DNA of 63,056 nucleotides, the filler included, from Sluysia triapertura (taxonomy: Eukaryota): the NCBI GenBank assembly GCA_046118255.1. It is 4 parts of 4 records of this genome, joined end to end, with 100 filler letters (N's around TTAATTAATTAA, not from the genome) between each part and the next. Parts side by side here need not be neighbours in the genome. Positions count along the whole stretch, not along the records: positions 20,639 to 36,633 come from JBJNIA010213365.1; 3 more parts are not named here. One strand, 5' to 3'. The position numbers were made by a program, and so were the translations under genes. The notes under the pieces are model-generated. The model saw only the letters and a list, made by a program, of their open reading frames with translations. It was not told the origin of the DNA and searched no databases. Positions 5,050 through 36,633 of this stretch are shown here, in pieces; the first letter of the stretch is position 1; the number at the start of each line of letters is the position of its first letter.

Positions 5050-5692
5050 AGCCAGTAATAAAAAACTGCGTACAATAAACTAGATAAAAGAAATAGATGT
5101 TGCTTTATGTCCTATAACAACTGACTTAATTTGTAATTTAATATTAAAGTAATCTATAATAATTCGAATTTTACGTAAATTCCCCATAACAATACTTTAC
5201 GTATTAACAATATTTTACGTATAACAATACTTTAGGTAATTATTAAATTACAAAATAACTGTAAAGTTAGATAATAACAATAACAATAATAATAATAATG
5301 ATGTAATTTGTAATGGTGGTCGTTAGGACAAGAGCGACACAGTGCAAAAAAGAAAATCTTAATATTAACATATTTGGTCACTATGATATAGTTAATTTTT
5401 TGATTTTATCGTAAAATTTTATAGTTTGTAATTTTATGATTTGTAAATTGTATTGGATGTAGTGAATTGGTAATGCGTAAGGTGAGTTTGACGTAAAACA
5501 AATGTCTTTATTGGTGAATGATAATAAAAATTGTTACTGGTACTTGCATGTAATTTATTGTAAGTTTTGAAATATATCTTGGCTACATCAAGATGACAGT
5601 GCATTGAAATGTTTTGTATGTAAATTGTGTATGGGCTTAGGTATGAACTTATGTGTGAGTGTAAAGATATTGTGTGTGGCTGTGTCACTACA
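5050..5692 (-). mobile_element. Divergent TG-starting cassette (copy E) upstream of the 4390-4928 pseudogene
   Basis: The minus strand begins TGTAGTGACACAG at 5692, followed by a C/A-rich tract (5420-5690) and a (TAT)n tract near 5270-5300. The layout matches the other cassettes, but the hairpin was not recognised and the left boundary is approximate. Confidence 0.4.
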
Positions 5693-20638: not shown

Positions 20639-21110
20639 AACATAGATTTTAACAATGGTTTGTTGTACTCAATTTCATATAGAAAAGTGAAAAAATTACA
20701 ATTAATAATTAATCACACAGCAAGACTAATTCTTAATGAATTGCATTGTTTGCCAATAAAAGCAAGAATAGAATTCAAAATCATGACAATAATTCACAAA
20801 TGCTTATATTACGGAAGTCATGAATAACTCTTAGAAATAATAAAAATTTGGAAACCAAGATGAATATTTCAATGAGACATAATAATAATCAATACAGAAT
20901 CCACAGTGATAATAAGAGTTAGATGATAGATTGTATACCGTTTATGTTTCAAAAATATACAACCAGTTACCAGAAGATTATGAAATATTTAAAAAAAGAC
21001 AAAATTCCTTCTGTTTCAGAAATATTATGGTGAATGATTTACTTTAAGCGCTTCTGAGTACTTACTTCGTAGTTTGTATGAGCGCAATATAAATTAACAT
21101 ATTACTATTA
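20639..21110 (+). mobile_element. L2-clade LINE 3' fragment
   Basis: It reads NGLLYSISYRKVKKLQLIINHTARLI..LNELHCLPIKARIEFKIMTIIHKCLYYGS and shares its 3' tail with the 16190 copy. Confidence 0.85.
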
Positions 21111-22487
21111 AAAAGTAGTTCAATAAAAATGGTGGTAATACATTTTCAAATAGATATTATCGTTGTGTGATTGTTTAGAATTACATTTTCTTAATTTCTT
21201 TGTCCCACTGTGCTGATCTTAATCGAATATAAGCAAAAATATTAACCATAACTAATTCACTTTTTATTATAAGTAGTACAAATTTGAATAAAAATTCATT
21301 AACTATTATTAATAACATATACACAAACATTTATATATATACAGAGATTATTTTTTTCTCCTATTTTTTTGTTTGGTTAGATCTATCTCTATCTATTTTA
21401 TATAGTACAGTCGTTTAGAAAAATATGATTAAAAACAGTGCCTCTGGTATCAACATATTGCTACTTTTTTAAAAAAAAATAAAATTACTTTGATCATCAT
21501 TTTTGGTATAATCCAATATCGTGTACAATATGGTGTATTTATTTTATTAGTTTTTATATGAATTTGTGTGTGTATGTGCATATAAACAATTTTCACTACG
21601 CTAATCTGGTAATGTATTTCTAAAACGTTTTTCGCTAAATTTAATAATTATACTTATAATTATTATTCTCATAATAATAAACTTCATAAAACGGACTGAT
21701 CGAGAATCAAATTCGGGACCTCTATCAATTATTATACTAAATGGCACTTTAGGTCTGTATCCCAACCAAATGTAAGGTTTTGAGTGCTCCGGGGAAAACA
21801 AAATAGCAAAGAAAAGGCGAAAAATCAAAATTACCCAATAAAAGATGTATTAATTTAAAAAATAATACAATAGTTATTTACTTACAAGCGATACAACATA
21901 TGGAATAATATAACGACGAAGGAGCTATTTCTGTTGCATAAAAGACTTTTTGTAATGCTATTGGTCAAAACTTCAATAACACAGTTAATTAAATTAATGT
22001 TTTTTTGAAAATCAGTTTGTAAACAGTTTACAATATTAATATAATTTTTATATGGTATTATCAAAGAATAAAAATTTTATTGCTTGGTATAAAAATCGAT
22101 GACTCATGAAATAAATGATCGATTTTAATTTATACAATCTAAAAAAATATTTTATTTTTATAGTTTTTTGCTCGGCTCACCTGCCCCTTTATTCGGCTTT
22201 GATCGCAATATATATCTCATCCAATTCAATTATGCTTGACCTCAAACATCTTGTGGGCTCACCAAATGTTAGACTTGAATGTTAACCAATGATTGCCCAT
22301 AATTAATTTTGCAATTATTCGCTAGCAGTTTCTCGAAGACACAGTACTAGTGTCAAGCACGGACTTAATCTACAAAAATACGTCATCATTTTCAAGTCTC
22401 TTCGCTTAAACTCTATCATCATATGCCACAAAATAATGTCTTTCAAATGATATTAGCTATCTGGAACAATTATTTTAATTATAAACA

Positions 22488-23349
22488 TATGGTGGCCAAC
22501 TTTATCACTTAAAATATTAACTCATTTCATCACAATAAAAAAATCACATTTTTGTAACATTTAAGCTATTATTTCTTCAAAAATCATTAAAATTGTAAAT
22601 CCAAATTTAAATGCAAAGGTAATTAACTAAATGGAATTACTTTTAACACCTTTAGCTATTGCAATACTTTTTATCATTTTCCTTATAATTTTATTTTCTT
22701 CCTTCCTTTTTTAATAACGAATTCTAAGTTCATTAATCACATATTGTGTATTCATTAGCCACATTTCTACTCGTCCAAATAGTCGCAATTACTTAAATTA
22801 TTCACATCATTCAAGCATTACTTAACCAATGATTTACTACGCTTTTCTTACTCAGATTTTAGAACAATGTAATCACACAGATTTAGATAGTAATTCAGAG
22901 TTTAATTATAAATCACTTAAATCTATATCTTTAAGACGAGTTAATTTTAAAATCTTCAAGCATTCATTCTATTCATTTTCATTGCATCACTACTCTTTAT
23001 ATTGTTATGAATATGATCTTTTTAATGCTACTCAAGAACAAAATTAGGTTTAAGAATAAAGAAAGAAATTAATATTAATTAAAATTATTTAAGGAAAAGT
23101 TGTATTTCAATCAGTTATGTCTTTTATATGTTTATTTTTATTTCATTTTATTATTATTATTATTATCATTAGTACACCTTTATTATTGTTAATTTTGATA
23201 TCATTAATTTTATAGTTGTTGCCAGATGATATAATCTGTCAATATTGACAAATTTTTAATCTGGTTTGATTTATAACTGCCAATTATTGACAGATCTCGA
23301 TAAATTAAAACCCATCATTGTTACTCTCTAATTTGCCAGAAAGTATACA
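22488..23349 (+). mobile_element. Cassette copy A (LTR-like or promoter cassette with hairpin)
   Basis: It starts TATGGTGGCCAAC, and the first ~200 bp align with 27320+ and with the reverse complement of 39900-40131. A (TAT)n tract lies at ~23140-23190 and a hairpin at 23234-23295. It ends ...GTATACA followed by TTGG. Confidence 0.65.
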
Positions 23350-23512
23350 TTGGTTTTAAAACAATTAATTTAATAATTTTTTAAATCATTAAATCGGCAA
23401 ATTTAATCTACTGACTCAGTTACTTCGATTTATCAAAGTTTATATTTACAGATTTTAAATTTAAAGTACAAAACAACCTTTTATATTCTAAGTGTTTTAC
23501 GTGAAATATAAA

Positions 23513-24312
23513 ATGCTAAACAGTCTTTACGACGATTATAATAATGATGATCATGATTATAAAGATTATTACGACGGTCATACGTACTCAAGTTCTAAAA
23601 CGTGTTGGGAATTGTCAGATGATATTAGATTGAGAAAGAAATTCTTCAATCAATTAAATACAAAGCGAAGTGCTGGTATTAAAGATAGTTATACAGACTT
23701 ACGTGACTCTATTCCAACGATGCATCGTCTTCAATTATGTTACTAAAAGCTGTTGAATATCTAGATGAGTTAAGTAAAAGAAGTAAAAGTATTAATTTAG
23801 AAAATAAATTCCGCTTAATGGAACAACAACTACAATATGTGGCATGTCAAGGCGGTTCGTTATCAACAACTAATAGTGATATTAGCAAAGCAGCAGTTTT
23901 ACCAGATGTTTCTAGTTCAAATAATATTCACGGCCATTCAGTTTCAACTGTAATGCAAACGCCTAATTTTTCTACTGAACCAATTAGTAACAAACAAGTT
24001 TATCGGCTACTAATACTCATTCCAGATCAGGTAGTGCGGCAAGTGATCATAAACACGCAAGTTATTTTTTGTACCTAAACAGTCATAATTATTCAATGAT
24101 AGATCAAGCCTTTTTAAATCAGCACTATGTATGTACGAAATTACAATAATAGGCCAATGCATAAAGTATGAAAAATCTTGTCCTTTTGACGCGGATTATA
24201 TGAATTAGTACCAATTCCTAAGGTCAATGCAGTCAATCCTTTTTGTTCACAAATTGATGAATCTGAACTTAACGTAACAATATACAAAGATTTTGTCAAA
24301 ACCTTTTCCAAA
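23513..24312 (+). pseudogene. Frameshifted gene: Max-like bHLH-ZIP fused to a C-x9-C-x6-C-x3-H zinc finger
   Basis: RKKFFNQLNTKRSAGIKDSYTDLRDSIPTM/..MLLKAVEYLDEL..LMEQQLQ resembles Max ([39 protein letters not shown]). Downstream it reads YLNSHNYSMIDQAF/KSALCMYEITIIGQCIKYEKSCPF/(A)RGLYEL. About 4 frameshifts are needed, and a GT-AG intron lies at 24313-24385. Confidence 0.72.
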
Positions 24313-26229
24313 GTAAATTTTAATTTTATTAAACATTTATTAGTTTTTAATTATGATGTTTACATTTTCACATTTTTATTTATAGGTTCAAATGTAGTTA
24401 TGGCAGTAGCTTATACAAGCAATTTTGGACAAAATTTTAATACATATTCCGGAGGGCTTTTTATTTTTTATTATTAATAAATTAATTAACTCATTAAATT
24501 CTTTAATTAAATTATTAAACAAATTTACAACAATGTTTAAAATTTTAATTATTTGAAAACAGACTAACAAAACTGCCTTAAGGTATTTAAACAAATAACA
24601 AAATACTAAAACAAAACCAATAAAATTTAAATCAAGTTTATTAAAACAATAAAACGTTTGTGTAAAAATATATGCAACCGTAGTTAATAGCAAAGGAATT
24701 GTTGAAGCATGAGAGCAACTGTTATTACTTATGGTATTATAATTTAGCGAAAAGTATAATAATCTTTTTAAATTACATTTACGACAACTTGATTCCCATA
24801 ATTCATTGAATGTTGTTGATAGTTTAAATAATTACAAATTTGTTCTGATTCATAATAACGTCTTAAAAATACTAAACATGCAGCTACTATTGTAACAAAT
24901 AATAATATGAACACATTATTGATTATACTGTACCATAATGGTGACGTTACTGTATAATATATTCATTTATTAATATATTTATTAATGTCGTACCAAATTC
25001 TAATTTATTTAGTTTATCGATTTTTTAATTAATCTTAATTTTTATAATTAATTTATTATATTTTCAGATTGCGATAGATATTTGAAGGATTTGCAATTAA
25101 TTTTATTTTATATATATTTGAATTCAGAACATATTTCAGACTCAACTTTATAGAATTATTATTCCAAAATATCGTTGCAAATTGGCCGAAAATAAGTGAA
25201 ATACTGTTAAGATTTTCATATGACTTACATTGCCGTAACATCACGACTTACTGTAGCTTTCTGATTGACTTTGTTCATTTTGAATTATTTCACATCTAAT
25301 TCTAGAAAGATTCATTCCATAACTTTCAAATTTTATTATTAAACAAATTCTTTAATATTAATTTTGGCTTTGTTTTACTAATATCGGTTTCTTAACATTT
25401 AAAAATGAAAATGTGACGTAAAACTAAAAATGACATTTCTCCAATTCAAATGTTTTTAAATGTCACATATGACGTATTAAATTATTAAAATTAGAATTAT
25501 TATTGATCTTGGTGTATAATTCCGATGAAAATTTTAGTAACAGATGAATATTTTTTGTTTTAATTTTAGTAATATATAAATATTTATTATTAATGTTTTT
25601 GTTGAATTATTATAAAATTTAGCAGATTTAGCAAACATACGTAATAATAGTTAATTATTAATATAATTAACAGGTATCTCAGTTATTCCAAGAGCAAGTG
25701 GCACTGTTTCAATTTGCTTTGAGGATACTTTCATAACCTATTTTTGCCTGTTCTTCTATTAAACATTTCAAATTACTTTTGCTATTGTGATGAAACTGAA
25801 TTAACGAGTACATTTCCAATTAATAAAGAACACAATAAAATGTTTCCGCATTTTCAAAATGGGTATATCTTTTAGCTTATTAGCAACATTAATTCCTTGC
25901 AATTCATAACAATAAATATTAGTTATAAAATATATAATATTGAACTGTCACTGACTTTTTGTTAATTAGATCGAATAATAAATCTTCCACTTGATTTCGA
26001 GAATCACAACTATCAATATTATTTCAACTTTATCATCGTATGATTCCCAACTGTTTCCACAAAATTTACATTTCTCTAAGTAAATTTTCAGCATCTCGTT
26101 ACTACTAAGTATAATGTGATTTTTGTTTCTTTGATTGATGGAGCTGTTTTTCTACTCGGTAAATCTGTATCATTATCAGATTGTCTATCATGACTATCAG
26201 AAACACACATACAAAAATATATAAAGAAG

Positions 26230-26433
26230 CAAAAGAATAAGAGTGATAACATGTAAGAATAATATAGTTATTATATATTTTAATATGATGATGTTAATGA
26301 ATTTATAATAACAATAACCATGATCGTGATAATTATTTACACTGAGTCAAGTAGTTTATTTAGTGTTCCGTGTATGTAAGAAATGTTCTTATGTGATGAA
26401 GTGTGTTTGTAATTTTTATATGATTTCCCTACC
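26230..26433 (-). repeat. Dispersed repeat beginning GTAGGGAAATCA (LTR-like 5' end); second copy ~59000-59208
   Basis: The blocks tgagtcaagtagttt, ttatgtgatgaag and atatgatttccctac are shared by both places. Confidence 0.75.
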
Positions 26434-27319
26434 TATGTGTATTTAAGAAAATTAATAAATGTATTAAGCATTATTTTAATAAATTTGTGACTTTGGAAAT
26501 AATTATAAAATTTTCATTTAATTATAATGCCCCATAAAACACATTAAAAAGATTTAATAATGCATTTCATTATAAAACATTTCGTCATAAAACATTGAAA
26601 TTTTTTGATATTTTGTTTACATACTGTCTTTAGTAGTTAAATAAATATTATTTTCTATCGGACAAGACTGTCGTTCTAATCATATATTAAACATTAAATC
26701 AAATTTCCAAACGTTCAAATAGTTTAACATCCAAAATTATACAACTTTCGAAGTATGAAATATGATAACGAAATTCCTACTTCATTTTTATTCATAATAC
26801 CTTTTATAATTTAGCAACTAATAAATTATCGAATAAAGCAATCTTTTAAAAATAAGCCATTGAAAGAGTGGACAGGCAGTTGGGACGAGCTATGATTCGG
26901 AATAAGTCAGTGACCTTCAAGAAAAAGTAAATATTAGGGAGGTCACAACTTGCAGACATTATTGACATAGTATCTTCTCTTTTCGATATGGATTAATTGG
27001 GAATAGTAACCATGGATACAGATTTTATTACTGTCCATCTCGATCTGTGGTCCAGTAAGCCTTATATTATGTTTTTAGGATTTATCTGTATTTTCAAAGT
27101 TGACGTGAGTATTAAGTTTAAGTTTGATTCAGGATTAACCAACTTTACGTCAAGGCTATTTACATGTAATTCATCGAGAATTCTCTAATTTCACATTAAA
27201 TTTTATTTTGTGATTATTTTTACATCCAATTGGGCATTATCTAAATTGATTTCATTGATATTTATTTTAAGCTGAACATCATCTAAATTATCTTTATGAA
27301 TATTTGCGTTAAAATGAGC

Positions 27320-28029
27320 CGTGGTGGCCAACCTTACTACTTAAAACTTTAATTTAATCAATCATAATAAAAAAATCACATTGCTGTAATATTTCATCTT
27401 TCATTTCTTCAAAAATGATTAAAATTGTAAATCTATCAAAACATTTTTAAGTTCACAATTCGACAACATTAAAATCATTAATACCATCAAAAATCATTAA
27501 AATTAGATTTTAAATTTATTTTAAAACATTAAACTAAATGGAACATCTTTAACTACGTTGTTACCATCTTTAGATATTCTTTCATAAATTTTCTTCACAT
27601 TTTTAATTTATATTTAAAGAAATGTAAAAGAATTTAAAGATGTAAAGAAAAAGAATTTTAATTTTAAAGAAAGAGAAATCTATGAAGGAAAAGAATGNNN
27701 NNNNNNNNNNNNNNNNNNNNNNNNNNNNNNNNNNNNNNNNNNNNNNNNNNNNNNNNNNNNNNNNNNNNNNNNNNNNNNNNNNNNNNNNNNNNNNNNNNNN
27801 NNNNNNNNNNNNNNNNNNNNNNNNNNNNNNAAAGTATTATTATTACTATTATCATTTTATCATCATTAATTATTATTATTTACATTACTATTACCATTAT
27901 TATTACTTCAATCAATTACTGCATACTATCAAGCTCGACAGTTGCTACACAAAATCAATTTCAATACTGTCATCATTGACAGTCACTTTTGTCAAAATAG
28001 ATTAACTGTGTAGTAACAATACTACCACA
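27320..28029 (+). mobile_element. Cassette copy B (contains an N gap at 27698-27830)
   Basis: It has a CGTGGTGGCCAACC start, C/A-rich then A/G-rich tracts, a (TAT)n tract and a hairpin at 27926-27982. The end CTACCACA is an inverted match to the start. Confidence 0.65.
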
Positions 28030-28481
28030 AAAATCCTGATAATTATTGGCCAACTAATAAGATTTCATTTATTTGATGCAAAAATTATTGTTGGTACAGT
28101 AGAGGTACACAATAAATTCAGAATTAATTTTGTTTGACTTAAAAAATAATACACTTCAGTAATTGTTATTGATTTTAAAAATTTCGGGAATAAAGTGTTG
28201 AAAATGTTATCCTGCTTATTGTAAATTTCAAGATTCAAACAAACATTAACTGAATTTTATTAAAAGTTTCAGTCAATTTTTATAATTATTTTGATATCAA
28301 AAATTTTAGTAAAGAAAAGATAGTTGTCATCCTCAATTAATTTTGTTAGATTCTTTTTACCTTATTTTCTTTTAGCTCAACATCTTAAAAGGTTAAAAAG
28401 ATATTTAATATTCGTGTAAATATTGAGATTCAACATATTTATTCTATAATTAATATACCTGACTATAAAGATACATCTTAA

Positions 28482-29271
28482 ATGAGTAATCATGATTTTA
28501 AAACAGAACTGGAACTTCTAATTAAACCAGGCAAAACTATGTTCCAAATGAAAGGATTGAATTAGTTATTAATGATAGTCATGTACACGATCGTAAAAAA
28601 GTGAAAGAAATATTACATCATTTGGATTCAGACAAAGATAAAATGATTAATTTATCAGCTATAGAAGTACTATATAATACTAAACCTCGTCTTTATAATG
28701 AACATATTTATTTTACTAATTTAATGGATATAATTATGATTAAACGACTTGATGATAAAGAAAGCAATCTTAAAGAATTTAAGAAGAGTTACATCAAAAA
28801 TGATGAACGTCTTAAAGAAGTAAATGCTGTAATCGAACATATTGATGTTTCACCCAACATAATATCAAATAAATATCTGAAATACGATTTTGATCAAGAT
28901 CACTACAAAACCGCACTATGTTTGTTTGGTACAACTAATTTAGGTATATGCCTCATATATGGCCGACTATGCCCATATGCCCACAACGTACCATAATTAT
29001 GTTATCAATCTTTCAATAACGTCAATTCTAATATCGACTTAGATCGCACTGACAAGCTACTAACTTCATTGGAAACTAATTCAAGCAATTCAAATCATCC
29101 AATTGATAACGGCATGAGTTGTGGTAATCATAATGATCATTTAACTATGATAAATAACGAATCAAAATTAGAAGTAAATTTTTCTTATATTGAATTTTTA
29201 GTCTAACGATATTTCTGTATTTTTATTAGGATTATTTGGCACTATGCGACCTGTGGTATGCCAAAATGTAA
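28482..29271 (+). pseudogene. Cassette-associated CCCH zinc-finger gene (one frameshift, one in-frame TAA, intron 29174-29229)
   Basis: It reads MSNHDFKTELELLIKPGKT.../..DQDHYKTALCLFGTTNLGICLIYGRLCPYAHNVP*LCYQ.., and the frame stays open to gaa|GTAAAT. The YKTxLC lead-in is typical of TIS11-type CCCH fingers. Confidence 0.7.
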
Positions 29272-30959
29272 GCCATCCACCAATTTTTTTGATAAACTGA
29301 CATTTAGTAATGATTTGATAACTTTAATTCATTTTATAACTAATAAAAATCTCAGTCTTATTTAGTATATTTTCATTTTAAAAGGATTGTAATAAATAAA
29401 TTGTATTTAATAAATAAATAAATTTTATCTTATGCAATTAATAAAAGAAAGTAATAAAATTTTAATCTTGGTATTTATACAAATAATTAAATTAATTAAC
29501 AATTTAATTAAATATAAAATAATCAATCATTTTACATTTAAAATAATAACATCCTATATTTTTCCAAATTAACTTGATTTTACCTAGAAAGCATTCTTAT
29601 TCTTATGATAGTACTTAAAGTCTTTGAATATAATTATGAACTTAAAATCTCAGTGCAATAAAATTTATATTTATGCAACTTAAAGCCGACAAACTTTATT
29701 GATAAATTTTATATAATAATTTTGGGTTGCCAAAGCACAAAAAGAATAAAATAACAAGCATTTATTGTAAAAATTGTACGTTGAAGAAAAAAAATAAAAA
29801 TTTTATGTTGAAATTTAAAATAAGCTTTATTAACGTCTTTAAATTTAGCGTGCCACAAACCTCTTTAATAGCAGAATCAGAATGTTGACCCTTCCTAATT
29901 TTCGAAAACTCGAATACTTCATTTAAAATCCGATGATTCTCGGTTAATATAGTTAAACAGTTTCTTATGCATAAAAAAATCTTGACATTGTCATGAAGAG
30001 TAGTACTAAATCGTTTTCATAATTATTCATCTTTGACTCTTTAACAGCACAAATCTTAATCCAAAAATGCCACCTTTTAATGTTTAAAATTCATTCAATA
30101 ACCGTATTTTAAAATAACTATCTTTTTATTAAAAGTTTCTGATTGTAAATAAATGAATCTTCATAATTTGAAGTTTCTAATATGTAATTATTATGAATGA
30201 ATGCTGATGAATTACAAATATTTTCTAAGTTATTTGTCAATGCATCTTCAATATTAAGTTCCCAGACTAATGCACATAATTGGTGGTATTACACATCTAT
30301 TTCTAATACTTCAGTTAGCATATATTAAGTAAAATGATTTAATGTCGAGCCTTTATACCGATTATTACATCTGATTTAAAAATTCCACAAAATCTGCCGA
30401 ACACATTTCCTATAATATTGAGAAATCACTTTTATTCATAGAATCAATGTCATTAAATTTTATTCCTAATTACATAATTTCTCAACTTTTAACAAAAAAT
30501 ATAAAAATTAATATAATAATATTAATAAAAACATTATTAAAACTTATAAATAAATATTAATTTGCTTTAAAATGTATTAAAAATTTCTCTTTTTATTAAT
30601 ACGTGATTATGTTTTTTTAATTTACTATTTTTTAAATTTCTAATAAACAAAATAATGACTTGAAAAAAAACAAATAAAATAATTATAATTACAATACAAA
30701 TTTTAAATCATTAAATTAATAAATAAAATTAATTATTTAAAATCTTTTAAAAAATAATTTAATTTTATTAAATTTGTTATAAATTAATTTAATTTAATAT
30801 TATATAATTAATATAGATGTCGAATGTAAAGTGTAAAAGTGTAAAAGAGAGAGTAAAATGATAAATAATTATTGTTTAATAGATTTGTGTTCATAATGGT
30901 GTAAGAAGGTATTGAATTAATATAGATTATTTATTTCATTAAGAGTGTTTTGTATAGAA

Positions 30960-31600
30960 TCTGCTGATATAGCGGTACAATCATGATATAAACATCATAA
31001 GCTAAGCAGGCGAAGAAATAATTCAAGTAAACGAAGTGTTCAATATTATGGATAGAAAATCGAATCAAGGGTTGAGTGGGTAAGCAAAATAGTGTCATGC
31101 ATGAGGGCAGCTTTGTTTCACACCAACTTTGACTGGACCAGCCAGAAGTATGAGGCTCCACTGAGAACATTTTGAGAAACCGAGATAGGTTCGGATTCAG
31201 ATTTTTGGAGAAGAAAGTGAGTGGATAGGTTTGGGTTCTTTGGCTCAGCAAGTTATTTCTTGCCTTTGGAGTTTCTATACACCAAAGAAGAATTTCGTAG
31301 CAATTTGAATTTTTACATTAACGATACATTATGTGTTAGATAAATATGATAAAAAGCCTCAATGGCGTAATAGCAAACATAGTAGAATTCAGGAGGAAAT
31401 TGAAAATTTAAACGGTGTTTATGTCATCAGAAAAATAAATAAGTGGGTTTGGAAATATCATCTGAAGAAGCCGTACCAAGTTTGAGATTACATCTGGTCA
31501 CAAGATTTCTGACTTTATGAAGAGATTTAAGTTCATACCTCAGTTAAGAGGTAGATTTCGAAGAATCAGAGTCTTAAGAGTGCGGAGTAGGTATACAAAA
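30960..31600 (-). mobile_element. Highly degenerate non-LTR retrotransposon (CR1/L2-type RT C-terminal region)
   Basis: Frameshifted pieces LLQKS*IRTYL..SGASYFWL..NKAA resemble the YKSLIRPxLEY..WSGA..QNKAA pattern of these LINEs. Confidence 0.4.
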
Positions 31601-34600
31601 TATAAGATCAGAAGACATTTAAGACATTAATGTTTAATTCCATTTTTTTATATGCTAAACATTTTTGAATTATTGTATAATTTAACTTTATTAAAAGCAA
31701 GACTGTATAATTTATAAAAATTTTTTCTTTCTCAGATTATTGAAACTGATACAATTTCTTTTCTGTTTGTATAACAATCAACTATAGAAATTTTTGGATT
31801 TGTAGAATTTTTATCTTGAAACTGTTTGTTTATTTAATTATCATTTTCTATTATCGTTATAAAATGTTTAAAATTGGACTTCTCCACTATATATAAAATA
31901 TTTCACCATTATATTCAAATTTATTAATCAATTAATCAAATTAATTAGCTAAATTTATTTGTTATTCCTGTATTTTAGGAATATTTTAAATTAGTCTTAA
32001 AATTTTCATATAATTTTTTGAATTTAAATTATTGAAATCAAATCAAAACAATATTTTAATTATGAAAATAATTATAATAATAATAAGATCGAATATTATG
32101 TTTAGCAACATTTACAGGTTTTTTGTTTTCTCCCCATTTTATTTAAATTATGTGCAACTTGCTCTCCTAAAATTATAAACTAGGAAAATGCCTGGTTAAT
32201 CAATTTATTAAACTTTAATTAATTTCGTCTCATTTATTTTAAGAAAACAAAATTTTTATCACAACTATTAAATAACTAAAATGTTTATCTATTTATTTTG
32301 TTTTATTATTAAAACACCTCTCCATTTGATCTTTTTTGACATACAACTTATACCTTTTTAATTTCCTAATATCTTTTATCATCTCACGTGACGTTTTGTA
32401 TTTGTAAAGAAAATATATAATGTCATATGTGTGCTCTCTTACTCGTGCATACTTTTGTTTATGCACAATTTCATTGGATAATTATTATGTAATTATTTAG
32501 ATTGCACTATGTTCCTTTCATTAAATTGAATTTGTTGCCAAAAGTGATATTTCTATTAATTACATTTATGTTATTTTCTCTAAATACATGTATTATCAAT
32601 TTATTTAAATGCGTCGTTTATTTTTACAAATGCTTAATGTGTATCTAAAATTAAAAACTAGCGAAGTTGACTAATACTTCTATATTTCAATAAAATGGGT
32701 TTGATTAATAACACGGCATTTCAAAATAGCGGTTTAATCGAAGAAAACCACTGAAAATAAAGAAGTGGTTATAGATATCTTTTCTACTAATCTACCATCT
32801 TTTTGCAACTGGTATTTACTGTTCTTACAGTATATAACCAAAGTAATAGTAGATCCAATGTATAAATAGAGCTTTCAGTTTCCCTGTAACATTTGCACTT
32901 ATATTTATAAGAGCTATATGATATTGTTTATAGATTTATTAACTGGATGCTCAGAATTGGTAATATCGGTAATTAATTTTAGTTTTTGATTTTACTTAAA
33001 AATAAGTGTTTCCAATACGGTATTTTTGATTTTATCTCGAATTTCATGAATTATTTAAAAATTTAACTTAGAATATGTAAATCAAGATTTAGTTATAACA
33101 GAACGAAATCATGTATAACAGGAAAGTATTTTGAGATGATTTTGAATTTTATATTAACATTAAAAAAGAATTTAATAAGAATTTTACACTTTCAAAGTTT
33201 ATATAAGTCACTTCATTTTTATATGAAATTCATATCATTTGTCATGTTTTCTTTGTGGTGATATTAAGCAAAATAATTTTAATATTAAGTTTGTACATTG
33301 AAAATATATTTTGTAAAAAGTGTTCTAGAGGATTTGTACATTTTCAAAACGGAGTACGAAAGTAATAATGAAAGTTTACATTAAAACGTAAAAATTCAAA
33401 GAATTGGCGAAGTCACCTTCACTGTCACTTTACATTACTGTTACTTTTAATATTAGGTTCAGTTTTATATAGCTATGTTTAAACCTTAAAATCGAAATCT
33501 CAGATTTATTTGTAGTACCTAAAAAGTACTTTATGGATCAAAACACTTTTGAATTATTTGTAATTGTTTGTAATTATTTGTAATTAAATAAAATTTTAAT
33601 TTGATATAGCTTTGGAAGTGAGAATTATGATTATATTGTCAATAATTAAATACTCTGTTGGTATATTTGAAATAATTCGAGATTTTAATTAAACTAATTT
33701 TTGATTTTATAATATTTCTAAAATTTAAATAACAATAAAAATGTTTAAATTATTCTTTTTGATATATGAAATGTATAAGTTATATACGAAATAATATAAT
33801 ATTCGCTTAATGTTAGTACGTACAAGTTAATGTGAATAAAAACATTAATTGAGTAAATAACTCTAGCAAGTAGCTTTTTTCCACTGTATTTTGATACAAA
33901 AGTTTTGTATTACTTTTTTGCAAAAATAGTTTTCAATGCATGAAAATTTATTCGTAAAATTCATTGAAAAGTTGTTAATAAGTACACGAACTAAACCCAG
34001 GACAGAATATAACCTACTTAGTGGAAATTAATAATTATAATAATAATAATTATTATTATTACTATTATTATCAAAATTATAAGTGAATATAAAATTAGTC
34101 ATGTTAGTGTTTTTGCATGTCATGTTTTTATAAATTATATTTTGAGCTTGCAATGTTTGACTTTCATTTTTCTTTTCTTTATTACACAATAATTATATAT
34201 ACTGTGGAAATATCATTAATATCACTAGATTATTTTATATTTTTAATATAAATGTTAATAAAAAATCTCGTATTTTGTCGTAATTACATATATATTATAT
34301 TAAGAATTTGTGTTTAGATAGATTATCACAACAATTTTCAAGAAATATAATAATAATAAAAATAATAATATAATATTTTGTTTTGTAAAATAATTTTAAA
34401 CATAATACTCATTTTTAAAAAATAATAATGTTCAAAAAATTACTCAGATTACAATGCTTTAGTATCAATTTAAAATGAAATTACATACATTTAATTTAAA
34501 TTCAAAACTTAATAACAAGTAACAATCAAATTTAAATTAGATTTGTATAAATAATCATTTTAAAGTAAGGTTCAATAAAGACAATATGAAATTAAAATTT

Positions 34601-34899
34601 ATAAACACCAAACCTTACTATTATAGTTAAAAAATTATCTTAAAATAGGAATTAATATTAAGAATATGAAATCAAACTTTAACAGCATAAAACTCGATCA
34701 AAATGTATAAAATATAAACAGCGTTCAAACATATTCAAATTTTGTAAAGAACAACATAAATTAATTTTAAATTGTTACAATAATAATTATTATTATAATC
34801 ATAATAATAATTTATATCGCTCTAATATCTACTCAAAAGCGTTTAAAATAAATTATACACTATAATATTTCTGAAGCAGTAATATTTTATAATCTTCCA

Positions 34900-36110
34900 G
34901 TAATTTAACTTTTTCTTGTAAATTTTGAAACGTAAACGATATATTACTTATCATCTAGCTTATTATCAATGTGGATTCTGTATAAATGATTAAATCTTAA
35001 TAATATATTCATTTTGGTTTCAGATTTTTATTATTTTCAAGAAATATTTAGGACTTACATATTATAAGCATTTATAAATTAAAGTCAAAATTTTGAATTA
35101 TATTGGTTACTTCTGAAAAATAACTTTAACGAAATCATAAACAATTAATTTAAAAACAATATTTTTAGTCTAAGGGCCATTAATAAAACAATATACGTGA
35201 GTTAACAAAATTAGACGGTAATTCATATAAATTATACTTCGATATTATTAAGGCTAATAAGTTAGGATTATTTGTAAAATGTTGTTAATATTCGACAATA
35301 TTACGAGTAGACAAATTTAATTCAGTAACTCTTTGCATACTTATAAAATTTTTTGGAATTTCTTTAACAAAATTATATTATACGTATAGTATTTTTATAT
35401 ACATATAAATTAATTCAGATGGTATTTTTAAAACACTTGTAAATTTAATAATTTTAGCAACTGTGATGGAAAATTCATTAATTTATAATGTGATAAATCA
35501 AAATTAACCATCCTGCAATTTTCGTAAATCGTACTTTCTATGAATCCTAATTTATTATTAAAGAGTTCACAGGTAAACGAGTCGAAATGTTACTAATATA
35601 ATTTAACATTTAAAATGTTATTTATGTAATGTCAAAATTGTGTGAATTATTCGGAAAAATATTGAAATGTACAGCACTGCAATGAAATTGTATTGATTTA
35701 TTACATTACTTAAAATTTCATCAAAAAATTTCACTTTATAAGAACTAATATATAAATAATCTATTGCAGCTAAATTAAATAAACTTGGATTAATTTCTTT
35801 GAAGTTATTATTAAACATGTTTAGATAATTTAGCTTAAATAAACTGTACATTTCAGATGGTATTAATTCTAATTTATTGCGAGATAAATTTAATATTATC
35901 AAAAAGTGAATAAAATAAAGATCTAACAAGTGTTATTAAATAAATTTTACATAAAATAGCTTCTTAAAGTCAGTTAAAATAATTAAATAACTTGGAATAT
36001 TTTCCAATTTGAAATTAAAAAGATCCAACATTTCTAAATCACATTGTGGGAATAAGCAATCCAGAATACTTTTTGGGTTCTGTTTAGATAACATTATTCT
36101 ATTTTCGTAA
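34900..36110 (-). pseudogene. Leucine-rich repeat protein pseudogene
   Basis: LRR units include LIILNLSRNKLELIPSEMYSLFKLNYLNMFNNNFKEINPSLFNL and LEMLDLFNFKLENIPSYL, with many stops in the flanking repeats. Confidence 0.7.
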
Positions 36111-36411
36111 TATATAAGAGGGATTAATCACTTAACCAGTAAATTCATTTATTTATTTTTTAATCGATACTTTTGTTAAGCATTAATATTATTTAATATT
36201 TTGATAATTATAACATAATAATCATAAATATAAATAATAATAGTAATAGAAAATAATAATAACAATAATAATAGGAATAATAAAATAATAATATTAATAA
36301 CAATAACAATAATATAATCAACATAAAAATAATAAGAATAAATATTACAATAGTATTAAATATAAATGATAATAATAATAATACAAATAATAAAATCTGA
36401 AGTTTTATATA

Positions 36412-36633
36412 CAGTAGACTCCCGTATAACGCGAGTTTATAAAGTGCGACGACTTTATTCATATAACGCGATTCCTGTATAACGCGGTATAGAATAAAAT
36501 ACGGGAATTTCCCTTTTAAACACTGTATAGATACATTTAATTTTTATGCACTCGTGTTTTTATATCTTTTTGTGTTTCAACGAAGTAGTTTATATTGCTT
36601 TGTCATTCTTTGCATTTCTATATTTAGACTTTT
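36412..36633 (+). mobile_element. Terminus of a pogo/Tigger-type DNA transposon, cut by the spacer
   Basis: TA|CAGTAGACTCCCGTATAACGCG is followed by repeated subterminal TATAACGCG motifs. Confidence 0.7.

What the first reader, a model, noticed from the sequence alone, without database searches (positions are those of the whole stretch)
22488..29271. Dispersed cassette-plus-cargo-gene units: a possible undescribed gene-carrying mobile or selfish element family
Seen: one non-coding architecture recurs. It has a TG(T)GGTGGCCAAC or TGTAGTG start, a C/A-rich tract, an A/G-rich block, a (TAT)n tract, hairpin(s) and an ...ACA end. Clear copies are at 22488(+), 27320(+), 40131(-) and 54996(+), with looser ones at 5692(-), 13498(-) and 53658(-), so all four scaffold pieces carry it. 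About 150-450 bp downstream of copies A, B and D, and downstream of E and F, in the same orientation, sits a lineage-specific gene rather than gag/pol or a transposase. These genes are interrelated (A-B share the CCCH finger, B-E the N-terminal half, D-F a weak N-terminal match), and A and B keep an intron. No TSDs flank the cassettes, so they do not look like plain solo LTRs. Inference: this is either a non-autonomous LTR-like or DNA element that spreads modular, intron-containing cargo, or a fast birth-and-death gene family with a shared promoter. The LTR-associated wtf drivers of fission yeast are an analogy only.
Basis: partly seen in the sequence, partly recalled or inferred. Interest (0 to 1): 0.85.

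Follow-up and report, generated by a model that had tools for sequence, protein, structure and literature searches.

The report
Repeat-headed units carrying decayed CCCH genes
Two neighbouring stretches of a very AT-rich animal-like genome each start with the same short, high-copy repeat and are followed about 1 kb later by a broken, species-specific zinc-finger gene; this looks like a decaying multi-copy gene family rather than a proven new kind of gene-carrying mobile element.

Summary
Two same-strand copies of a repeat "head" start exactly at TGGTGGCCAAC (22490, 27322). They are 83% identical over 112 nt (E 4e-29), followed by a weaker second block. Beyond the head, only a CTGTCA-N3-TGACA palindrome, a TAT tract and one extra TGGCCAAC recur; alignment there is no better than shuffles.

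Each head is followed about 1.0-1.15 kb later, on the same strand, by an orphan gene relic. Gene A (23513-24474) has a Max-like bHLH-zipper N-terminus plus a degenerate CCCH finger, and is spread over at least four frame changes. Gene B (28482-29203) has a CCCH finger, one frameshift and one in-frame stop. The two share only the finger.

Contigs of the one public run show that the A unit, from cassette tail through the gene, exists in other diverged, indel-ridden copies. They also show the head is much more abundant than the body.

No LTR, TIR or Helitron hallmarks, TSD, PBS, RT or transposase were found.

Best reading (0.45): a DNA-level amplified, decaying orphan gene family whose 5' flank contains an interspersed repeat. 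A cargo-carrying non-autonomous element is not excluded (about 0.2-0.25). The assembly gap lies in non-coding cassette DNA and remains unbridged.

The parts
22490..22700 (+). Cassette A head. Block 1 (22490-22601) starts at TGGTGGCCAAC. Block 2 (22602-22700) contains AACTAAATGGAA. The + strand is G-poor.
   Evidence: In one search, 20-46 distinct related contigs lie here, and the summed depth falls sharply after about 22700.
22701..23131 (+). Cassette A body. B has no counterpart for it. It ends in a weak A/G-rich patch (about 23040-23100) that shares TAAAGAAAG with B.
   Evidence: In one search, 5-22 related contigs lie here, the same order as over gene A.
23132..23171 (+). (TTA/TAT)n tract of cassette A.
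23234..23295 (+). Hairpin region of cassette A. Imperfect inverted arms lie at 23234-23261 and 23268-23295. The core palindrome CTGTCAATATTGACA is at 23236-23250, and GCCAAT is at 23279-23284.
   Evidence: (z -1.95).
23513..24474 (+). Gene A relic. It has a Max-like bHLH-zipper N-terminus and a degenerate CCCH finger (24116-24187). The reading switches frame near 23716-23725, 23995-24045, 24110-24130 and at 24188/24189. A possible intron lies at 24314-24385.
   Evidence: In one search, other copies show 87/88-, 125/126- and 41-nt indels, and a 1-nt indel at 24188.
24391..24962 (-). Convergent orphan open frames of 147 and 64 aa with hydrophobic segments. They lie inside the repeated A unit and overlap the 3' end of gene A.
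   Evidence: no family, no homologue. In one search, 8-26 related contigs lie here. A marginal colinear match to 29761-29857(-) downstream of gene B has E 0.09.
27322..27609 (+). Cassette B head. Block 1 is 27322-27433. A B-specific 80-nt internal duplication is at 27434-27513. Block 2 is 27514-27609.
27610..27697 (+). A/G-rich block of cassette B, with a 22-nt unit repeated 2.3 times. It abuts the assembly gap.
27698..27830 (.). Assembly gap (N). It lies between the A/G block and the TAT tract, was not bridged, and was not filled.
27835..27907 (+). (TAT)n-like tract of cassette B.
27967..28054 (+). Palindrome CTGTCATCATTGACAG (27967-27982), a second hairpin, and a third copy of TGGCCAAC (28047-28054).
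   Evidence: z -2.39; expected 0.06.
28482..29300 (+). Gene B relic. It has an ATG at 28482, a frameshift near 28550, and a 156-aa open frame at 28526-28993 that ends in a Cx9Cx6Cx3H finger (28904-28990). An in-frame TAA is at 28994-28996, after which the frame stays open to 29203. A possible intron lies at 29175-29229.

Best explanation
These are two members of a lineage-specific, DNA-level amplified and now decaying family of CCCH-finger genes. They are not a demonstrated mobile element.

Each unit has three parts:
- A 5' flank that begins with a fragment of a short, very abundant interspersed repeat (the 'head', about 210-290 nt).
- A gene-proximal region with a TAT tract, a CTGTCA/TGACAG palindrome and a CCAAT-like GCCAA(T/C) motif. 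This is probably the old promoter (inferred).
- An orphan gene with a Cx9Cx6C-type finger.

Unit A has a Max-derived bHLH-zipper in front of the finger and carries a convergent orphan ORF. Units are copied as genomic DNA, with flanks and the intron-like segment kept (shown for A). Copying is by segmental duplication or recombination between dispersed heads (inferred). The copies then drift neutrally into pseudogenes, as both local copies have.

The head is far better conserved between A and B than the genes are (83% against 57% nt in the finger). It is therefore younger than the A/B gene split or has been homogenised. It is best seen as transposable-element-derived sequence at the unit boundary, not as proof that the unit transposes.
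For: - Head repeat and its sharp 5' edge.
- Recurring palindrome, TAT tract and TGGCCAAC.
- Both downstream genes carry the same unusual finger spacing and match PF25427.
- Gene A is Max-like. The ten best PDB matches are all Max (E 0.03-0.07), and helix 2 reads LLKAVEYLDEL in the next frame.
- Both genes are broken.
- Other genomic copies. One contig spans 23181-23512, from cassette tail to the ATG. Another covers 23932-24442, including the intron-like part, with 63 other letters and 35 gap letters. Between 5 and 46 distinct related contigs lie along 22336-24887. These copies differ by indels, including one exactly where the window copy changes frame (24188).
- The ten best-supported substitutions are 8 non-synonymous to 2 synonymous.
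- No mobility hallmarks or enzymes.
- Long open frames of 156, 147 and 123 aa are far beyond chance in 23% GC DNA, so these were real genes recently: plus the stop-codon frequency from base composition.
Against: - The head is 83% identical while the rest of the units is saturated. Simple co-duplication cannot explain both, so an extra process is needed: independent or targeted insertion, conversion, or selection on the head.
- The head sits at almost the same distance and orientation in both units (1023 and about 1160 nt before the ATG). A cis-acting terminus would behave this way.
- Summed contig depth is not a copy number. The single run may be the sample the assembly came from. Contigs were laid at 80% likeness in AT-rich DNA.
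- No genome-wide view of what follows other heads was possible.
- There are no expression data.
Confidence: 0.45

Rival explanations
1. The units are non-autonomous mobile elements (LTR-like/LARD-type, Helitron-like or other). Their conserved 5' terminus is the head and their interior carries captured, modular host-derived gene pieces (Max-like bHLH-zipper, CCCH finger). Only the cis-acting end is kept by selection for mobility, while the cargo decays.
For: - The pattern is a conserved end with a diverged interior.
- The 5' boundary at TGGTGGCCAAC is sharp.
- The head has much more related-contig depth than the unit body, as with solo ends or many cargo subfamilies.
- The A unit is multi-copy with internal deletions typical of element derivatives.
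- The gene make-up is chimeric and modular, and the bHLH region is read with no interruption but a 1-nt frame change.
- TGGCCAAC recurs at the far side of cassette B.
Against: - No conserved 3' terminus.
- No TIR or foldback.
- No PBS-like TGG after the head, no TSD, and no Helitron 5'-TC. A CTRR end is seen only in A.
- No RT, integrase, transposase or Rep-Hel in the piece.
- Related-contig depth already rises upstream of the head in A (22336 to 22624) and drops at about 22700. This suggests the head is the 3' part of a separate short repeat rather than the unit's terminus.
- The intron-like segment is kept, which argues against an RNA intermediate if it is a real intron.
Confidence: 0.25
2. 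The head is an ordinary SINE- or LINE-type or other interspersed repeat fragment. It landed independently, or was kept by chance, upstream of two old paralogous pseudogenes. There is no functional or mechanistic link between head and gene.
For: - The genome is packed with repeats. Most bins of the 5.9 kb laid carry many related contigs, including unrelated families at 25649-25845, 26240-26436 and 26634-26830.
- The depth gradient rises towards about 22700 and then falls sharply, like 5'-truncated retroposon copies.
- LINE tails in this piece end in ATT/TAA microsatellites.
- Similarity outside the head is not above shuffles.
Against: - The only two copies in 16 kb are both on the gene strand and at nearly the same distance from the ATGs of two finger paralogues. 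A rough estimate of this arising by chance is about 1%.
- The palindrome and TGGCCAAC also recur in order.
- No poly-A or microsatellite tail at about 22700 or 27610, and no TSDs.
Confidence: 0.17
3. The A head and the B head are the two LTRs of one old non-autonomous LTR element (about 22490-27610), with gene A in its interior. Gene B merely lies beside the 3' LTR.
For: - Two direct repeats lie 4832 nt apart and start with TG.
- A 4-of-5 match, ACATA and ACATT, flanks one possible pair of ends: read.
- The head has more related-contig depth than the interior, as with solo LTRs.
Against: - LTR-like similarity decays towards the 3' end instead of ending in a conserved CA terminus.
- No PBS or convincing PPT, and no gag or pol.
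- This does not explain why the palindrome, TAT tract and a CCCH gene follow both heads.
- A 4-of-5 match is trivial in AT-rich DNA.
Confidence: 0.06

Closest known systems
Gene-fragment-carrying non-autonomous transposons (Pack-MULEs, gene-capturing Helitrons, LARD/TRIM-type LTR derivatives). Comparison from general knowledge.
   Same: It is multi-copy. It has a conserved end with a variable interior built from chimeric, host-derived, mostly decayed gene pieces, and no enzyme of its own.
   Different: None of their defining ends was found here: long TIRs with a 9-10 bp TSD; 5'-TC and 3' hairpin-CTRR; or paired LTRs with PBS and PPT. Mobility is not shown.
Birth-and-death multigene or pseudogene families spread by segmental duplication, with dispersed repeats at the duplication boundaries (as with Alu at primate segmental duplications). 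Comparison from general knowledge.
   Same: Copies are made at the DNA level and keep flanks and the intron-like sequence. Many copies are broken. A common interspersed repeat sits at the unit edge. No TSDs.
   Different: The head is much better conserved than the genes between A and B. Whether the copies lie in duplicated blocks is unknown.
Comparison from general knowledge.
   Same: A fast-evolving, lineage-specific gene family is physically associated with a repeat.
   Different: There is no sequence or architectural similarity. The proteins here are soluble bHLH/CCCH types rather than multi-pass membrane proteins. Both local copies are broken, and drive cannot be tested.
Unkempt/TTP-type CCCH zinc fingers (Pfam PF25427 zf-CCCH_UNK) and the Max bHLH-zipper.
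   Same: Gene B scores 30.0 bits on PF25427 (cut-off 31.1) and gene A scores 22.5. Helix 1 of gene A aligns with Max (IKDSYTDLRDSIP against [13 protein letters not shown]). Helix 2 and a heptad-like stretch follow.
   Different: There is a single finger with Cx9Cx6Cx3H spacing, and gene A lacks the final His in frame. The basic-region residues that contact the E-box in Max are replaced. No known protein combines the two domains. No homologue was found in 1.8 billion representatives.

Membership tests
LTR retrotransposon / solo LTR | TG...CA termini with both ends conserved | tested here: inconclusive
   Both heads start with TG (TGGTGGCCAAC). Similarity fades towards the 3' side, and no common CA end is present.
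LTR retrotransposon / solo LTR | PBS after the 5' LTR, PPT before the 3' LTR, and a 4-6 bp TSD | tested here: not met
   No TGG-type PBS follows about 22700 or about 27610. Only a weak purine run precedes 27322. The one flank match, ACATA/ACATT, is 4 of 5 and not significant (read).
LTR retrotransposon / solo LTR | gag-pol interior or an autonomous partner | tested here: not met
   Pfam finds no RT, RNase H, integrase, protease or gag in the open frames of the piece. A partner elsewhere in the genome could not be searched.
TIR DNA transposon / MITE / Pack-MULE | Terminal inverted repeats and a fixed-length TSD | tested here: not met
   No inverted partner of the head exists. Head against reverse-complemented A/G block is no better than shuffles. 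An 18-of-20 inverted pair at 22114/23300 is within chance expectation.
Helitron | 5'-TC, a 3' hairpin followed by CTRR, and insertion between A and T | tested here: not met
   The head starts TGG, not TC. A palindrome is present in both copies. CTGG follows only in A, and B has no CTRR within 30 nt. No Rep-Hel was found.
SINE / 5'-truncated non-LTR retroposon (for the head alone) | Common 3' end with an A-rich or microsatellite tail, variable 5' truncation, and TSDs | tested here: inconclusive
   Related-contig depth rises from 22336 to 22624 and collapses after about 22700, which fits 5' truncation. The 3' end is T/C-rich without a tail. No TSD, tRNA or 7SL/5S-like head was found.
CCCH zinc-finger proteins (zf-CCCH_UNK, PF25427) | C-x-C-x-C-x3-H finger matching the family profile | tested here: inconclusive
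   Gene B: E 4.8e-7, 30.0 bits against a cut-off of 31.1, spacing Cx9Cx6Cx3H. Gene A: E 1.1e-4, 22.5 bits, with the final His not in frame. PDB matches are weak.
Max-type bHLH-zipper | Basic region with His/Glu/Arg E-box contacts, helix-loop-helix, and leucine zipper | tested here: inconclusive
   The ten best PDB hits are all Max, but only at E 0.03-0.07, covering helix 1. Helix 2 lies in another frame. The contact residues are replaced. Pfam HLH does not score on either piece.
wtf-like poison-antidote drivers | Multi-pass membrane protein with two overlapping transcripts, and meiotic drive | not testable with these tools
   No RNA run exists. Genes A and B have no membrane segments and are broken.

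The most novel reading that the evidence does not exclude
The head is the cis-acting end of a so far undescribed non-autonomous element family of an AT-rich animal. The family picks up and spreads modular, intron-containing host-derived regulatory gene pieces (a Max-like bHLH-zipper and CCCH fingers) to dozens of copies. A and B would be two cargo subfamilies.
Probability: 0.2. Interest if true: 0.7.

Novelty: new member of a known kind. Interest (0 to 1): 0.35.

Why it matters
If the units are only a decaying multi-copy orphan family, this is ordinary genome turnover. Its use is in annotation: these are repeats and pseudogenes to mask, and the chimeric Max-like/CCCH open frames should not be called as genes.

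If the head proves to be a transposition end, this would be an animal example of large-scale capture and amplification of transcription-factor-like gene pieces. It would then be a source of new chimeric regulators. Deciding between the two needs only a whole-assembly tabulation.

Tried and rejected
- **Homologue searches.** Four searches found nothing: the 156-aa frame of gene B, the middle of gene A against 1.8 billion representatives, gene B in the ESM Atlas, and the 147-aa minus-strand frame. The genes are orphans and the organism stays unidentified (the run's organism name is coded).
- **Other copies in public collections.** Scans of viral and metagenome contigs for the head found none.
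- **RNA features.** Rfam at gathering and relaxed thresholds and ARAGORN found no ribozyme, small RNA or tRNA feature in the cassette. The heads do not fold better than shuffles.
- **Foldback or TIR idea.** The A/G block as an inverted copy of the head was rejected.
- **Full-length paralogy of A and B.** Rejected, because the N-terminal halves do not align (z -0.5).
- **Joints 22436/22437/22441 to 26546/26575.** These could have meant a 4.1-kb insertion into an older repeat. I rejected them as evidence. The short side is only 20-22 nt at 80% likeness. By my estimate such a match is expected about once in two tries in 5.9 kb of this composition, and contigs of one repeat family would all land on the same chance site.
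- **hAT-like motif in 26997-27185.** A D-L-W-S-S motif seen by eye has no Pfam support.
- No RNA run exists, so splicing, transcription starts and expression could not be tested.

Full report
**Setting.** The piece (20639-36633) has about 23% GC. It looks like an animal genome for three reasons. It carries the C-terminal tail of a CR1/RTE-type LINE open frame at its left edge, with a diverged inverted copy at 34024-35104. It has a leucine-rich-repeat gene relic on the minus strand near 35431-36127. It has a Max-like bHLH sequence. No tRNA or Rfam family is present.

**The repeat itself.** A stringent self-comparison of the piece finds only two repeat pairs: the LINE tails and the cassette head.
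- The head starts at TGGTGGCCAAC at 22490 and 27322. These are the only two occurrences, against 0.04 expected.
- It is 83% identical over 112 ungapped nt (E 4e-29). Upstream of the 11-mer the two copies are unrelated.
- Copy B then has an 80-nt internal duplication (27434-27513).
- After that, a second block (22602-22700 and 27514-27609) aligns at about 65-75% and contains the exact 12-mer AACTAAATGGAA.

**The rest of the architecture is much weaker.**
- The cassette tails align no better than shuffled sequence.
- Shared 9-mers are only marginally enriched (24 against 13.8 +/- 5.5).
- The A/G-rich block comes down to a shared TAAAGAAAG.
- Three things do recur in the same order. One is a TAT/TTA tract. 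Another is a CTGTCA-N3-TGACA palindrome, found only at 23236 and 27967 (expected 0.03; hairpins z about -2). The third is a GCCAA(T/C) motif.
- In B that motif is a third exact TGGCCAAC at 28047 (expected 0.06). In A it is GCCAAT at 23279.

**The gap.** The N run (27698-27830) falls between B's A/G block and its TAT tract. That is the order seen in A, where the two lie about 30-50 nt apart.
- No contig listed bridges it. The tool reports that reads seem cut at the TAT tract just behind it, which is probably why the assembler stopped there.
- The only frames that cross it are TAT-repeat artefacts.
- Continuity is plausible but not shown.

**Gene A (23513-24474).** It is read in at least four successive frames.
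- The first piece aligns with helix 1 of Max. All ten best PDB matches are Max (E 0.03-0.07), but the E-box contact residues are replaced.
- Helix 2 (LLKAVEYLDEL) and a zipper-like stretch follow in the next frame. The shift falls in the loop.
- Further on lies a finger, C-x9-C-x6-C, whose final His is out of frame (Pfam PF25427, E 1e-4).

**Gene B (28482-29203).**
- It has one frameshift near 28550.
- A 156-aa open frame ends in a Cx9Cx6Cx3H finger (PF25427, E 5e-7, 30.0 bits against a cut-off of 31.1).
- An in-frame TAA follows at 28994, after which the frame stays open for another 69 codons.

**Were these real genes?** With about 9% stop codons expected from base composition, open frames of 156, 147 and 123 aa are far beyond chance. 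They were real genes not long ago.

**How A and B relate.**
- They share only the finger and a short stretch before it (tblastx E 6e-4). The semi-global z is 3.0, and the N-terminal halves give z -0.5.
- Nucleotide identity in the finger is 57%, against 83% in the head and a 32% background.
- Both have a similar GTAAATTTT donor-like site after the finger. Without RNA the intron is only an inference, and in A the frame stays open through it.
- Nothing related was found in the large protein libraries.

**Other copies in the genome.** Only one public run holds this DNA, and it is kept as contigs. It may be the sample the assembly came from. Laid at 80% likeness, exact single-copy contigs have depth 13-15, for example 26646-27474. 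The evidence for other copies is as follows.
- A 380-nt contig covers 23181-23339 and 23373-23512 with 25 other letters. Another copy therefore also joins the cassette tail to the start of gene A.
- A 764-nt contig covers 23932-24442 with 63 other letters and 35 gap letters, including the intron-like part.
- Variant letters are carried by 28-46 distinct contigs over 22336-22624 and by 5-22 over 22729-22984. The counts are 33 at 23783, 4-13 over the finger region, and 8-26 over 24398-24887.
- Other copies differ by indels of 87/88, 125/126 and 41 nt. They also differ by one letter at 24188, exactly where the window copy changes frame.
- Summed depth is not a copy number, but its shape is informative. 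It rises from 22336 to 22624, collapses after about 22700, stays moderate through gene A and the minus-strand frames to about 25057, and is at single-copy level at 26831-27224.
- The ten best-supported substitutions in gene A are 8 non-synonymous and 2 synonymous, so there is no sign of constraint.

**Reading.** The A unit (head, body, gene A and a convergent orphan frame; at least 2.7 kb) is a multi-copy stretch copied at the DNA level and now decaying.
- The head is a separate, much more abundant short repeat.
- Its 83% identity between A and B cannot be the same age as the genes. It is therefore younger, homogenised, or selected.
- No feature that defines LTR elements, TIR elements, Helitrons or retroposons was met.
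- The equal position and strand of the head in front of two finger paralogues, together with the ordered palindrome and GCCAA motifs, make pure chance unlikely.
- I therefore favour a birth-and-death orphan family whose units are bounded by a transposable-element-derived repeat, with the palindrome and CCAAT-like region as the old promoter (0.45).
- A cargo-carrying non-autonomous element remains possible (0.25). Chance juxtaposition is at 0.17, and a single old LTR pair at 0.06.
- Which steps are shown: the repeat, the broken genes, the shared finger, and the other DNA-level copies. Which are inferred: the promoter role, the mode of amplification, and the introns.

**Comparison with what is known.** Functionally it resembles gene-fragment-carrying transposons or repeat-bounded segmental duplicates. 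It is not a member of any tested transposon class. The domains are ordinary (a Max-like bHLH-zipper and an Unkempt/TTP-type CCCH finger), but their combination and the rest of the proteins have no known relatives. The wtf analogy has no support here.

Noticed in passing
window 20639-21685 (+) and 34024-35104 (-): Two diverged 3' ends of one LINE family lie in inverted orientation about 13-14 kb apart and bracket both units. They are 72% identical over 302 nt (E 1e-42). Each has a CR1/RTE-type ORF tail (...LHCLPIKARIEFKIM...). Both end in ATT/TAA microsatellite tails (21642-21685, 34024-34082).
   Followed up: partly
window 26343-26432: A very high-copy segment of about 90 nt. 111 distinct contigs carry a variant at 26369. 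This is the highest summed depth in the stretch that was laid. Many contigs have loose ends on both sides, as for a short MITE-, SINE- or satellite-like unit. Other abundant repeats lie at 25649-25845 and 26634-26830.
   Followed up: no
window 24391-24962 (-): Open frames of 147 and 64 aa with hydrophobic segments run convergent to gene A and overlap its 3' end. They have no Pfam family and no homologue. They lie inside the repeated A unit. A marginal colinear match (E 0.09) lies downstream of gene B at 29761-29857 (-).
   Followed up: partly
window 30930-31630: An island of 34% GC with strong positive GC skew (+0.3) sits in about 20% GC surroundings. It has a 128-aa minus-strand open frame (30934-31317) with no Pfam match. 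Its origin is unknown: a transposable-element fragment or an exon.
   Followed up: partly
window 35431-36127 (-): A leucine-rich-repeat gene relic in three open pieces separated by stops (LRR_8, E 9e-5).
   Followed up: partly
window 26997-27185 (+): A single-copy 63-aa frame just upstream of cassette B has a hAT-transposase-like D-L-W-S-S...Y motif by eye. Pfam does not support it.
   Followed up: partly
window 21690-21800 (-): Right after the LINE tail lies a stretch with a tRNA T-arm-like motif (GGTCCCGAATTTGATTCTCGATC). It could be a tRNA-derived SINE head or a tRNA relic. ARAGORN calls nothing.
   Followed up: no
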